64,000 nt of DNA from Antechinus flavipes (Eukaryota): NCBI RefSeq assembly GCF_016432865.1, contig NC_067400.1, positions 623,968,001-624,032,000 on the forward strand. Direction: 5' to 3'. The translations under genes were made by a program, and so were the position numbers. The notes under the pieces are model-generated. The model saw nothing but the letters and a program-made list of their open reading frames with translations, searched no databases and was not told where the DNA came from. Shown in pieces: positions 3,001 to 7,800 of the stretch (position 1 is its first letter; each line of letters starts with the position of its first letter).

Positions 3001-3962
3001 GGCCCTCGGTGCCCGTTCCCCGCTGCTCCCCCTTGTGGCCCTCGGCCCGTTCCCCGCTGCTCCCCCTTGTGGCCCTCGGTGCCCGTTCCCCGCTGCTCCC
3101 CCTTGTGGCCCTCGGTGCCCGTTCCCCGCTGCTCTCCCCCTTGTGGCCCTCGGTGCCCGTTCCCCGCTGCTCCCCCTTGTGGCCCTCGGTGCCCGTTCCC
3201 CGCTGCTCCCCCTTGTGGCCCTCGGTGCCCGTTCCCCGCTGCTCCCCCTTGTGGCCCTTGGTGCCCGTTCCCTGCTGCTCCCCCTTGTGGCCCTTGGTGC
3301 CCGTTCCCCGCTGCTCCCTTCCCCACTGCTCCCCCTTATGGCCCTTGGTGCCCGTTCCCCGCTGCTCCCCCTTGTGGCCCTTGGTGCCCGTTCCCCGCTG
3401 CTCCCCCTTATGGCCCTTGGTGCCCTTCCCCGCTGCTCCCTTCCCCACTGCTCCCCCTTGTGGCCCTTGGTGCCCGTTCCCCGCTGCTCCCCCTTGTGGC
3501 CCTTGGTGCCCGTTCCCCGCTGCTCCCCCTTGTGGCCCTTGGTGCCCGTTCCCCGCTGCTCCCCCTTGTGCCCTTGGTGCCCGTTCCCCGCTGCTCCCCC
3601 TTGTGGCCCTTGGTGCCCGTTCCCCGCTGCTCCCCCTTGTGGCCCTTGGTGCCCGTTCCCCGCTGCTCCCTTCCCCACTGCTCCCCCTTGTGGCCTTGGT
3701 GCCCGTTCCCCGCTGCTCCCCCTTGTGGCCCTTGGTGCCCGTTCCCCGCTGCTCCCCCTTGTGGCCCTTGGTGCCCGTTCCCCGCTGCTCCCCCTTGTGG
3801 CCCTTGGTGCCCGTTCCCCGCTGCTCCCCCTTGTGGCCCTTGGTGCCCGTTCCCCGCTGCTCCCCCTTGTGGCCCTTGGTGCCCGTTCCCCGCTGCTCCC
3901 CCTTGTGGCCCTTGGTGCCCGTTCCCCGCTGCTCCCCCTTGTGGCCCTTGGTGCCCGTTCCC
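1..3962. repeat. 36-bp GC-rich minisatellite in GRIN2D intron (array 1), with 51-bp and ~50-bp variant units
   Basis: Unit TGTGGCCCTTGGTGCCCGTTCCCCGCTGCTCCCCCT repeated; variant with a 15-bp insert CTTCCCCACTGCTCC and a GAGGGCGGCCC-containing variant. Confidence 0.97.
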
Positions 3963-4005
3963 CAGCCGGAGGACGGCCCAGTTCAGGGCCCCGCTCTCTC
4001 CTCAG

Positions 4006-4478
4006 GTCCTGGCGGCTCAACCTTCACCATAGGAAAGTCCATCTGGCTCCTCTGGGCGCTGGTCTTCAACAACTCGGTGCCCGTGGAGAACCCCCGGGGC
4101 ACCACCAGCAAGATCATGGTGCTGGTCTGGGCCTTCTTTGCCGTCATCTTCCTGGCCAGCTACACGGCCAACCTGGCGGCCTTCATGATCCAGGAGGAGT
4201 ACGTGGACACCGTGTCCGGACTGAGCGACCGCAAGGTGGGGGCGACGCCGGGGGGGGAGGGGGAGGCAGCTGCGGCCCCCCCCCCGCGGCCTGCTCAGCC
4301 GCGCCTCTCCCCCGCAGTTCCAGCGGCCCCAGGAGCAGTACCCGCCCCTGCGCTTTGGGACCGTGCCCAACGGCTCCACAGAGAAGAACATTCGCAGCAA
4401 CTACGAGGCCATGTACAACTACATGGTGCGCTACAACCAGCCCCGCGTGGAGGAGGCCCTGATCCAGCTGAAGGCCGG
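4006..4478 (+). CDS. GRIN2D: Second copy of two GRIN2D exons (M2/M3 exon 4006-4235 and S2 exon 4318-4478)
   Basis: Offset exactly 2722 bp from 6728-6957 and 7040-7200. The first exon is identical; the second differs by one synonymous base (A4380 vs G7102). Splice sites are intact. Confidence 0.9.
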
Positions 4479-4829
4479 GTCAGTGCTGGGCCCGGGGGGG
4501 GGGGCTCAGGGAGGGCGTTAGGGCCCGCCGGACGCAGGGGAGCCTCGGGCCACCAGCCGGCACCATGGGGGCCCGACCCTGCCTGTCTCTCCCCGACCCT
4601 GGGGGCCCTTCCCTCCCGGACCCCGGGGGGCCTGTGGTTCTTTGAGCCAGGGCACCCAAGGCCTCCCTGACGGGCCGCTGGCCCCAGAGGCGGAGCCCCC
4701 TGCGCCTGGGGTCTCTGCCCCGTGAGTGTGGGAGCCTTGGATGCATCCTGAGGCCTGGGCTCAGGGCACGCAATGGAGGGGGCTTGGCAGCAGGGGAGTG
4801 GATGTGATGACCTCCTGCCTGCCCCGCAG

Positions 4830-7800
4830 AGCCCTACAGTCCAGCCGTTTGGGTCATGATGTTTGTCATGTGTCTGACCGTGGTGGCGGTCACCGTCTTC
4901 ATCTTTGAGTACCTCAGTCCTGTCGGCTACAACCGCAGCCTGGCCACCGGCAAGCGTGAGTGTCCTGGCGGCCCGGCCGCTCCCTGCCAGCCTTCTATGC
5001 CCCCTCCCCCTCTCCCCCGCATCCCCCCCCCCCCGCACCCGTTCCCCGGCCCGAGGGCGGCCCTGCTCCCCCTTGTGGCCCTTGGTGCCCGTTCCCCAGC
5101 CCGAGGGTGGCCCTGCTCCCCCTTGTGGCCCTTGGTGCCCGTTCCCCAGTCCGAGGGCGGCCCTGCTCCCCCTTGTGGCCCTCGGTGCCCGTTCCCCAGC
5201 CCGAGGGTGGCCCTGCTCCCCCTTGTGGCCCCGGAGCCCATTCCCCAGTCCGAAGGCGGCCCTGCTCCCCCTTGTGGCCCTTGGTGCCCGTTCCCCAGCC
5301 CGAGGGTGGCCCTGCTCCCCCTTGTGGCCCCGGAGCCCATTCCCCAGTCCGAAGGCGGCCCTGCTCCCCCTTGTGGCCCTTGGTGCCCGTTCCCCAGTCC
5401 GAGGGTGGCCCTGCTCCCCCTTGTGGCCCTCGGTGCCCGTTCCCCGCTGCTCCCCCTTGTGGCCCTCGGTGCCCGTTCCCCGCTGCTCCCCCTTGTGGCC
5501 CCGGAGCCCATTCCCCAGTCCGAAGGCGGCCCTGCTCCCCCTTGTGGCCCTCGGTGCCCGTTCCCCGCTGCTCCCCCTTGTGGCCCTTGGTGCCCGTTCC
5601 CTGCTGCTCCCCCTTGTGGCCCTTGGTGCCCGTTCCCCGCTGCTCCCTTCCCCACTGCTCCCCCTTATGGCCCTTGGTGCCCGTTCCCCGCTGCTCCCCC
5701 TTGTGGCCCTTGGTGCCCGTTCCCCGCTGCTCCCCCTTATGGCCCTTGGTGCCCGTTCCCCGCTGCTCCCTTCCCCACTGCTCCCCCTTGTGGCCCTTGG
5801 TGCCCGTTCCCCGCTGCTCCCCCTTGTGGCCCTTGGTGCCCGTTCCCCGCTGCTCCCCCTTGTGGCCCTTGGTGCCCGTTCCCCGCTGCTCCCCCTTGTG
5901 GCCCTTGGTGCCCGTTCCCCGCTGCTCCCCCTTGTGGCCCTTGGTGCCCGTTCCCCGCTGCTCCCCCTTGTGGCCCTTGGTGCCCGTTCCCCGCTGCTCC
6001 CTTCCCCACTGCTCCCCCTTGTGGCCCTTGGTGCCCGTTCCCCGCTGCTCCCCCTTGTGGCCCTTGGTGCCCGTTCCCCGCTGCTCCCCCTTATGGCCCT
6101 TGGTGCCCGTTCCCCGCTGCTCCCTTCCCCACTGCTCCCCCTTGTGGCCCTTGGTGCCCGTTCCCCGCTGCTCCCCCTTGTGGCCCTTGGTGCCCGTTCC
6201 CCGCTGCTCCCCCTTGTGGCCCTTGGTGCCCGTTCCCCGCTGCTCCCCCTTGTGGCCCTTGGTGCCCGTTCCCCGCTGCTCCCCCTTATGGCCCTTGGTG
6301 CCCGTTCCCCGCTGCTCCCTTCCCCACTGCTCCCCCTTGTGGCCCTTGGTGCCCGTTCCCCGCTGCTCCCCCTTGTGGCCCTTGGTGCCCGTTCCCCGCT
6401 GCTCCCCCTTGTGGCCCTTGGTGCCCGTTCCCCGCTGCTCCCCCTTGTGGCCCTTGGTGCCCGTTCCCCGCTGCTCCCCCTTGTGGCCCTTGGTGCCCGT
6501 TCCCCGCTGCTCCCCCTTGTGGCCCTTGGTGCCCGTTCCCCGCTGCTCCCCCTTGTGGCCCTCGGTGCCCGTTCCCCGCTGCTCCCCCTTGTGGCCCTTG
6601 GTGCCCGTTCCCTGCTGCTCCCCCTTGTGGCCCTTGGTGCCCGTTCCCCGCTGCTCCCCCTTGTGGCCCTTGGTGCTTGTTCCCCAGCCGGAGGACGGCC
6701 CAGTTCAGGGCCCCGCTCTCTCCTCAGGTCCTGGCGGCTCAACCTTCACCATAGGAAAGTCCATCTGGCTCCTCTGGGCGCTGGTCTTCAACAACTCGGT
6801 GCCCGTGGAGAACCCCCGGGGCACCACCAGCAAGATCATGGTGCTGGTCTGGGCCTTCTTTGCCGTCATCTTCCTGGCCAGCTACACGGCCAACCTGGCG
6901 GCCTTCATGATCCAGGAGGAGTACGTGGACACCGTGTCCGGACTGAGCGACCGCAAGGTGGGGGCGACGCCGGGGGGGAGGGGGAGGCAGCTGCGGCCCC
7001 CCCCCCGGCTGCCTGCTCAGCCGCGCCTCTCCCCCGCAGTTCCAGCGGCCCCAGGAGCAGTACCCGCCCCTGCGCTTTGGGACCGTGCCCAACGGCTCCA
7101 CGGAGAAGAACATTCGCAGCAACTACGAGGCCATGTACAACTACATGGTGCGCTACAACCAGCCCCGCGTGGAGGAGGCCCTGATCCAGCTGAAGGCCGG
7201 GTCAGTGCTGGGCCCGGGGGGGGGGGCTCAGGGAGGGCGTTAGGGCCCGCCGGATGCAGGGGAGCCTCGGGCCACCAGCCGGCACCATGGGGGCCCGACC
7301 CTGCCTGTCTCTCCCCGACCCTGGGGGGCCCTTCCCTCCCTGACCCTGGGGGGCCCGTCCCTCCCCGACCCCGGGGGCTCCTCCCTTCCGGACCTTGGGG
7401 GGCCCTTCCCTCCCCGACCCCAGGGGGCCCATGCATCCTGGACCCTGCCCATCCCTCCCCGACCCTGGGGGCCCTTCCCTTCCCAACCCTGGGGGGCCCG
7501 TCCCTCCCGGACCCTGGGGGGCCGTGCTCGGGGAAGTCGGGGCTGCTGGCGGGGAGCCCCCTGTGGGTCCCAGGGCTGACCCATCCCCACCGCCGGCCCC
7601 CAGGAAGCTGGACGCCTTCATCTATGACGCCGCCGTCCTGAACTACATGGCCCGGAAGGACGAGGGCTGCAAGCTGGTGACCATCGGCTCGGGCAAGGTC
7701 TTCGCCACCACGGGCTACGGCATCGCCCTGCAGAAGGGCTCCCGCTGGAAGCGGCCCATCGACCTGGCCCTGCTGCAGTTCCTGGGGGACGGTGAGCCGG

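What the first reader, a model, noticed from the sequence alone, without database searches (positions are those of the whole stretch)
3960..7355. Tandem duplication of the GRIN2D pore-module exons (M1, M2/M3, start of S2)
Seen: exon order is M2/M3, S2a, M1, VNTR, M2/M3, S2a, S2b. The copies are offset by 2722 bp, with a breakpoint near 4618-4632 inside the GACCCTGGGGGGCCC intronic repeat. They differ by one synonymous SNP, a few intronic bases and very different VNTR lengths. All splice sites are intact. Splicing the first S2a exon (phase 2) to the second M1 exon (phase 1) frameshifts to a stop at 4906-4908; paths using either copy once stay in frame. Inference: if real, this is a redundant pore cassette with a built-in nonsense path in an NMDA receptor gene. 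The ~99% identity with allele-like differences makes false duplication of two haplotypes at least as likely.
Basis: partly seen in the sequence, partly recalled or inferred. Interest (0 to 1): 0.7.

Follow-up and report, generated by a model that had tools for sequence, protein, structure and literature searches.

The report
Duplicated GRIN2D pore exons, probably misassembly
Two exons of the NMDA-receptor gene GRIN2D appear twice, head to tail and almost identical, in this marsupial reference genome; this is more likely an assembly error in a repeat-rich, very GC-rich stretch than a real gene change, but no read data could be examined to settle it.

Summary
Window 3901-4632 and 6623-7355 are direct copies, 98.6% identical over 734 columns. 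Each carries the 230-nt M2/M3 exon and the 161-nt S2a exon of the GluN2D gene. Between them lie a 126-nt M1 exon and a 36-nt minisatellite. All splice sites are intact. The M2/M3 copies are identical and the S2a copies differ by one synonymous base. Splicing S2a (copy 1) to M1 gives a stop at 4906-4908.

Whether the duplication exists in the animal could not be tested. 

Indirect evidence leans towards an assembly artefact (about 65%):
- The assembly used noisy PacBio reads with wtdbg and Pilon, with no haplotype purging reported, in a highly heterozygous species.
- The differences between copies look allelic.
- The minisatellite upstream of copy 1 holds a 1657-bp near-exact re-duplication that differs almost only by tiny indels.
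- All six aberrant-length minisatellite units sit within about 1.2 kb before copy 1.
- A real copy would frameshift a constrained gene.

Against this, no gap separates the copies. A real, young, possibly heterozygous tandem duplication remains about 30% likely. Outward-facing PCR or long-read mapping would decide.

The parts
1..3963 (+). Intronic 36-nt minisatellite, array 1, cut by the window start. It contains a 1657-bp higher-order duplication (1-1657 and 1658-3314, plus a partial third copy 3315-3963).
   Evidence: TRF (period 36, 103 copies). Unit coding. In-2311 vs 1658-3963 differ by 1 substitution, six 1-2-nt indels and two 15-nt unit indels.
2775..3694 (+). Cluster of six aberrant-length minisatellite units (1-2-nt indels). 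This marks locally poor consensus just upstream of copy 1.
   Evidence: No such units occur in 1-1657 or in array 2.
3901..4632 (+). Duplicate copy 1: end of the minisatellite, the M2/M3 exon, an intron, the S2a exon and the start of the next intron.
4006..4235 (+). M2/M3 (pore loop and gate helix) exon, copy 1, 230 nt.
   Evidence: Read directly (translation contains the SYTANLAAF gate motif). Boundaries.
4318..4478 (+). S2a exon, copy 1, 161 nt.
   Evidence: best PDB match is GluN2D residues 698-750 (7yff_B), E = 2e-26. Boundaries.
4632..4633 (+). Duplication junction. The 25-nt repeat of the S2a-S2b intron abuts sequence upstream of the M1 exon, with no N gap.
4633..4829 (+). 3' end of the intron preceding M1. 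If transcribed as assembled, 4479-4829 would be a 351-nt intron between S2a (copy 1) and M1.
4830..4955 (+). M1 exon, 126 nt.
   Evidence: best match GluN2D 580-620, E = 2.6e-21. Lig_chan profile positions 2-33, below threshold. Boundaries.
4906..4908 (+). Stop codon met when M1 is read in the frame left by S2a.
5031..6685 (+). Intronic minisatellite, array 2: a 50-nt unit block followed by 36-nt units, about 1650 bp.
6623..7355 (+). Duplicate copy 2.
6728..6957 (+). M2/M3 exon, copy 2, identical to copy 1.
7040..7200 (+). S2a exon, copy 2. It has one synonymous difference (G7102 vs A4380).
7311..7523 (+). 25-nt GC-rich minisatellite in the S2a-S2b intron. The right breakpoint of the duplicated unit lies in its second or third unit.
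7604..7791 (+). S2b exon, 188 nt, single copy.
   Evidence: GluN2D 752-813, E = 1.9e-35. Boundaries.

Best explanation
The second set of pore-module exons is most likely an assembly artefact. On this reading the animal has one M1 - minisatellite - M2/M3 - S2a - S2b series. The reference contig passes through the locus more than once, probably laying two haplotypes that differ in minisatellite length one after the other, and over-expanding the minisatellite. The gene would then be an ordinary, intact GRIN2D.

Shown: the sequence anatomy, the assembly method and the locally poor consensus. Inferred: that the 4632|4633 join has no support in the animal's DNA.
For: 1. Assembly method (PMC9290055). 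The assembly used 100x PacBio CLR reads, Canu 1.7 correction, wtdbg 1.2.8 and Pilon with 100-bp reads. The terms 'purge' and 'haplotig' do not occur in the main text. The species has the highest heterozygosity of the dasyurids compared.

2. Known error classes. False duplications are tied to heterozygosity and carry more erroneous k-mers, and false exon duplications inside genes are documented (PMC9516828). Joins without a gap and sequence expansions occur inside contigs (PMC9668749).

3. Differences between the copies look allelic: 7 substitutions in about 730 bp, at least four of them at CpG sites, plus 3 homopolymer-type indels. Only 1 of the 10 events falls in the 391 exonic bases, and it is synonymous.

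4. Directly upstream of copy 1 the minisatellite repeats itself with a 1657-bp period. It shows one substitution in 2.3 kb and otherwise only tiny indels, as expected if one sequence was assembled twice from noisy reads.

5. All six aberrant-length repeat units lie in 2775-3694, next to copy 1, and none in the other arrays. This suggests that stretch was built from few reads.

6. As assembled, default splicing of six strong exons would frameshift (517 nt) and stop at 4906-4908. Yet the rest of the gene is intact: S2b, the visible start of the M4 exon (the rest is masked) and a stop-free last exon ending in ESEV.
Against: No N gap lies between the copies, whereas false duplications on one scaffold are most often separated by a gap. 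The junction is continuous contig sequence. From general knowledge of how the assembler works (not tested here), wtdbg tends to collapse haplotypes rather than retain them, and it builds consensus from real read segments, so a new adjacency normally needs reads that contain it. The assembly size of 3.19 Gb equals the k-mer estimate of 3.2 Gb, so there is no sign of global haplotype retention. True allele-specific tandem duplications inside contigs exist. No read depth, spanning reads or phasing could be examined.
Confidence: 0.65

Rival explanations
1. A real, young tandem duplication of the unit [end of the intron before M1 - M1 - minisatellite - M2/M3 - S2a - start of the next intron] is present on at least one haplotype of the sequenced male. 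Its right breakpoint lies in the recombination-prone 25-nt minisatellite. Transcripts that include all six exons shift frame, stop at 4906-4908 and would be degraded by nonsense-mediated decay. The allele would then be a hypomorph or null, unless splicing skips one whole cassette.
For: The arrangement is head to tail with a sharp, gap-free junction in continuous contig sequence. One breakpoint sits in a GC-rich minisatellite and the unit is flanked by another. The two minisatellite arrays differ in organisation as well as length, as fast-evolving paralogous arrays would. Assemblers do recover true allele-specific tandem duplications inside contigs. From general knowledge of the method, wtdbg consensus derives from read segments.
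Against: It would frameshift a gene that is otherwise fully intact. From general knowledge, GRIN2D is intolerant of loss in humans. About 1% divergence with no decay of either copy's exons or splice sites fits alleles as well. Signs of poor consensus and of repeat over-expansion lie next to copy 1. No independent read, RNA or cross-species support was obtained.
Confidence: 0.3
2. A real, fixed duplication is used as a mutually exclusive three-exon cassette, with the frame incompatibility enforcing use of exactly one cassette.
For: Double inclusion and double skipping both break the frame (517 nt). From general knowledge, this is the logic seen in some mutually exclusive exon pairs.
Against: The two cassettes encode identical protein, so the choice would have no functional consequence. 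No competing-RNA-structure or steric mechanism was identified. The intron between S2a (copy 1) and M1 is an ordinary 351 nt. The copies are too similar to be old. No RNA data were available.
Confidence: 0.03

Closest known systems
False heterotype duplication in unphased long-read assemblies (Ko et al. 2022, PMC9516828; Rhie et al. 2021, PMC8081667)
   Same: The copies are near-identical with allele-like substitutions. The species is heterozygous and no purging step is reported. Error-like bases lie next to one copy. Exons are duplicated within one gene, as in the GABRG2 example.
   Different: No gap separates the copies, and both lie in one continuous contig. Read depth and k-mer multiplicity, the defining tests, were not available.
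Within-contig sequence expansion or gapless chimeric join (Jarvis et al. 2022, PMC9668749)
   Same: The feature is gap-free, sits inside a contig and lies in tandem-repeat-rich sequence. The adjacent minisatellite shows a near-exact 1657-bp re-duplication.
   Different: That paper describes human HiFi/ONT assemblies. No equivalent audit of this assembly was found.
Pathogenic or polymorphic intragenic tandem duplications of exons (general knowledge, for example in the human GRIN2A epilepsy-aphasia spectrum; not checked here)
   Same: Head-to-tail duplication of internal exons whose summed length is not a multiple of three, predicted to cause a frameshift and nonsense-mediated decay.
   Different: No evidence here that the allele exists in an animal. 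A search for 'GRIN2D' with 'intragenic duplication' found no paper.
Mutually exclusive tandem exon duplicates in ion-channel genes (general knowledge: AMPA receptor flip/flop, sodium and calcium channel exon pairs)
   Same: Tandemly duplicated exons of a channel gene, where double inclusion is incompatible with the reading frame.
   Different: The known cases are old, single-exon and encode different peptides. Here three exons are copied and the proteins are identical.

Membership tests
GRIN2D (GluN2D NMDA receptor subunit) gene | Exon translations match GluN2D better than GluN2A, 2B or 2C | tested here: met
   M1 (E = 2.6e-21), S2a (2e-26) and S2b (1.9e-35) each match GluN2D chains best (7yff_B residues 580-620, 698-750, 752-813). 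GluN2C or GluN2A come next.
GRIN2D (GluN2D NMDA receptor subunit) gene | Pore loop and M3 gate motif (SYTANLAAF) in the M2/M3 exon | tested here: met
GRIN2D (GluN2D NMDA receptor subunit) gene | Syntenic neighbours and C-terminal PDZ ligand | tested here: met
   One search finds an inward-rectifier channel gene (18944-20257) and a Sec7 gene (25649-26806) downstream. From memory, this matches the human 19q13.33 order GRIN2D-KCNJ14-CYTH2. The last-exon ORF ends in ESEV.
False heterotype duplication (criteria of PMC9516828) | About half the normal read depth over each copy | not testable with these tools
All listed runs are kept only as contigs, which do not give depth.
False heterotype duplication (criteria of PMC9516828) | Gap or unsupported join between the copies | tested here: inconclusive
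   No N lies between the copies; Ns occur only at 7942-8073 and 47555-47936. Whether 4632|4633 is supported by reads is unknown.
False heterotype duplication (criteria of PMC9516828) | Haplotype-specific differences between the copies, and an excess of erroneous bases | tested here: inconclusive
   Seven substitutions and 3 indels that look allelic. Six error-like indels cluster at 2775-3694 next to copy 1. These are suggestive but not the k-mer test itself.
Real tandem segmental duplication | Junction present in independent reads, individuals or relatives | not testable with these tools
   The protein-word search with a junction-spanning frame found nothing.
Real tandem segmental duplication | Head-to-tail copies with a defined breakpoint | tested here: met
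   The left end of the first unit lies outside the window, so microhomology could not be assessed.
Mutually exclusive exon cluster | Alternative exons encode different peptides | tested here: not met
   The M2/M3 copies are identical and the S2a copies differ by one synonymous base.

The most novel reading that the evidence does not exclude
The duplication is real. A wild marsupial would then carry a very young tandem copy of the whole M1-M2-M3-S2a cassette of GRIN2D, created at a GC-rich minisatellite. Default splicing would send transcripts to nonsense-mediated decay. That would make it a natural hypomorphic or null allele of an NMDA receptor subunit, or the raw material for a multi-exon mutually exclusive cassette.
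Probability: 0.3. Interest if true: 0.5.

Novelty: not a real feature. Interest (0 to 1): 0.22.

Why it matters
If it is an artefact, the value is practical. The reference and any annotation built on it may show a broken, 'low quality' or mis-spliced GRIN2D, and gene-gain or pseudogene screens in dasyurids should mask this locus. It also shows that this unpurged CLR assembly can hold gap-free false tandem copies at minisatellites.

If it is real, it would be a natural loss-of-function-type structural allele of an NMDA receptor subunit in a species used as an ageing and neuropathology model. It would also be a clean case of minisatellite-associated exon-cassette duplication.

Tried and rejected
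No read or contig evidence was therefore obtained. After, no letters of 4071-4210, nor of the identical twin 6793-6932, were sent to any search tool. Only local scripts and coordinates touched them.

3. The search for homologous proteins was run with the stop-free antisense frame across the junction (4298-5029, minus strand), hoping to pick up ORFs called on public short contigs. No hit at E <= 0.001. A second search with the S2a exon was judged unlikely to help and was not run, to spare the shared resource.

4. A full-length GRIN2D protein search was not possible. The spliced (joined) model was deliberately not built or searched; exons were searched one by one by reference.

5. Earlier scan notes held nothing for this place or gene.

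6. Papers: no report of a GRIN2D intragenic duplication. No supplementary files are held for the assembly paper, so a k-mer heterozygosity figure was not available.

7. A chance explanation is rejected: 734 columns at 98.6% identity.

8. A retrocopy is rejected: introns are present in both copies.

9. A homotype (error-only) false duplication is rejected for the exon copies because they differ by 7 substitutions. It remains possible for the 1657-bp repeat inside the upstream minisatellite.
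Full report
**What is there**

The window opens inside a 36-nt, very GC-rich minisatellite (array 1, 1-3963). It is followed by:
- a 230-nt exon (4006-4235);
- a 161-nt exon (4318-4478);
- 154 nt of intron that ends in two units of a 25-nt repeat;
- 197 nt of different intron sequence (4633-4829);
- a 126-nt exon (4830-4955);
- a second minisatellite (array 2, 5031-6685);
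- the same 230-nt and 161-nt exons again (6728-6957, 7040-7200);
- a full 25-nt minisatellite (7311-7523);
- a 188-nt exon (7604-7791).

Every exon has an AG acceptor and a GT donor.

Local alignment puts 3901-4632 on 6623-7355 at 98.6% over 734 columns. Homology stops abruptly at 4632/7355. The window has only two N runs, at 7942-8073 and 47555-47936, so nothing separates the two copies but ordinary sequence.

**Identity of the gene**

The exons were searched one by one by reference. Each matches GluN2D best among solved structures: the 126-nt exon matches residues 580-620 (M1), the 161-nt exon 698-750 (S2), and the 188-nt exon 752-813. The M1 exon also touches the start of the Lig_chan profile, below its cut-off.

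Downstream lie an inward-rectifier potassium channel gene and a Sec7-domain gene. From memory, this matches the GRIN2D-KCNJ14-CYTH2 order of human 19q13.33. The last-exon frame is open and ends in ESEV.

- The offset is 2722 bp.
- The M2/M3 copies are identical. The S2a copies differ only at 4380/7102 (ACA/ACG, both Thr).
- The intronic differences are 4 substitutions and 3 short indels (two G-run length changes and one beside a C run), plus CC/TT in the last minisatellite unit.
- The three exon lengths sum to 517, which is 1 modulo 3. Reading M1 in the frame left by S2a gives a stop at 4906-4908.

All of this is confirmed.

Homology between the two copies continues, at about 93%, for some 1.3 kb into the minisatellites.

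Array 1 also has a structure of its own. Positions 1-2311 align with 1658-3963, differing only by one substitution, six 1-2-nt indels and two 15-nt unit indels. That is a 1657-bp unit present two and a half times.

Coding the repeat units shows that each such unit has the same architecture as the whole of array 2: a block of 50-nt units, a run of one 36-nt variant, then a patterned run of another.

The six units of aberrant length (48, 34, 74, 50, 35 and 35 nt) all lie between 2775 and 3694. That is the roughly 1.2 kb just before copy 1. None occurs in 1-1657 or in array 2.

**Source of the sequence**

Earlier notes of this scan name the genome as the yellow-footed antechinus. I did not verify this independently.

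The assembly paper (PMC9290055) describes about 100x PacBio continuous long reads, Canu 1.7 correction, wtdbg 1.2.8 and Pilon polishing with 50x of 100-bp reads. The terms 'purge' and 'haplotig' do not occur in its main text. It reports that A. flavipes has about twice the heterozygosity of three of the other small dasyurids compared.

In a 72%-GC minisatellite region, short-read polishing is expected to work poorly (inference).

**Real or artefact: what could not be done**

The decisive evidence is read-level, and I did not obtain any.
- The look-up of sequencing runs listed 24 coded runs, all kept as contigs.
- A protein-word search with a stop-free antisense frame across the junction found nothing.

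**Real or artefact: weighing the indirect evidence**

For an artefact:
- The method and species fit the known causes of false duplication, namely heterozygosity, noisy reads and no purging. False exon duplications inside genes are documented, and falsely duplicated regions carry more erroneous k-mers (PMC9516828).
- Gap-free chimeric joins and sequence expansions inside contigs are a recognised error class (PMC9668749).
- The differences between copies look like heterozygous sites: at least four of the 7 substitutions are CpG transitions, and only 1 of 10 events falls in 391 exonic bases.
- The neighbouring 1657-bp re-duplication differs almost only by small indels. This is what two passes of a noisy consensus over one sequence would give.
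- The cluster of aberrant units next to copy 1 suggests thin read support there.
- A real copy would, by default splicing, destroy the frame of a gene whose other exons are perfectly preserved.

Against an artefact:
- There is no gap between the copies.
- The assembly is not inflated: 3.19 Gb against a 3.2-Gb k-mer estimate.
- From general knowledge of the method, wtdbg tends to collapse haplotypes and derives consensus from real read segments, so a new adjacency usually reflects reads that contain it.
- True allele-specific tandem duplications inside contigs are known.
- Minisatellites are hot spots for real rearrangement as well as for misassembly.

I put the artefact at about 65% and a real, young, probably heterozygous tandem duplication at about 30%. 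A functional mutually exclusive cassette gets a few per cent, because the two cassettes encode the same protein.

**Mechanism under each reading**

If it is an artefact, the animal has one cassette and an ordinary GRIN2D. The two copies are its two alleles, one with a long and one with a short minisatellite.

If it is real, the duplicated unit runs from 197 nt upstream of M1 to the second or third unit of the 25-nt minisatellite. The left end of the first unit lies outside the window. The 351-nt interval 4479-4829 would act as an intron. Full inclusion would give a premature stop in the second M1 exon, far upstream of the last exon junction, and hence nonsense-mediated decay (inference). Productive mRNA would require skipping three consecutive strong exons.

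**Verdict**

The best-supported reading is a misassembly, so interest is low unless the simple tests listed show the junction in genomic DNA.

Noticed in passing
window 1-3963: The intronic 36-nt minisatellite has a 1657-bp higher-order unit present about 2.4 times. The copies differ by one substitution and a few tiny indels. Each unit mirrors the architecture of the whole second array (5031-6685). This is either a very recent unequal exchange or an assembly over-expansion.
   Followed up: partly
window 7311-7523 (and remnant 4589-4613): A 25-nt GC-rich minisatellite (about 9 units) in the S2a-S2b intron, found nowhere else in the 64 kb. It hosts the right breakpoint of the duplication.
   Followed up: partly
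window 10343-11239: A purine-rich 30-nt tandem array (about 31 copies), about 0.9 kb downstream of the stop codon of the GRIN2D last exon.
   Followed up: no
window 12736-13505 and 36489-38248: Two further tandem arrays, with periods of about 49 nt and about 427 nt, seen in the self-comparison. The region is unusually rich in minisatellites.
   Followed up: no
window 18944-20257 (+) and 25649-26806 (+): A single-exon inward-rectifier potassium channel ORF (IRK and IRK_C domains) and a Sec7-domain exon. This is consistent with KCNJ14 and CYTH2 as syntenic neighbours of GRIN2D.
   Followed up: partly
window 31548-34163 (+): An 872-codon open frame with nine matches to the Pfam PT disordered repeat (E = 4e-54). 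It may be a proline/threonine-rich exon of a neighbouring gene, or an open frame created by a GC-rich repeat.
   Followed up: no
window 7942-8073 and 47555-47936: N runs of 132 and 382. The first removes the middle of the M4 exon of GRIN2D.
   Followed up: no
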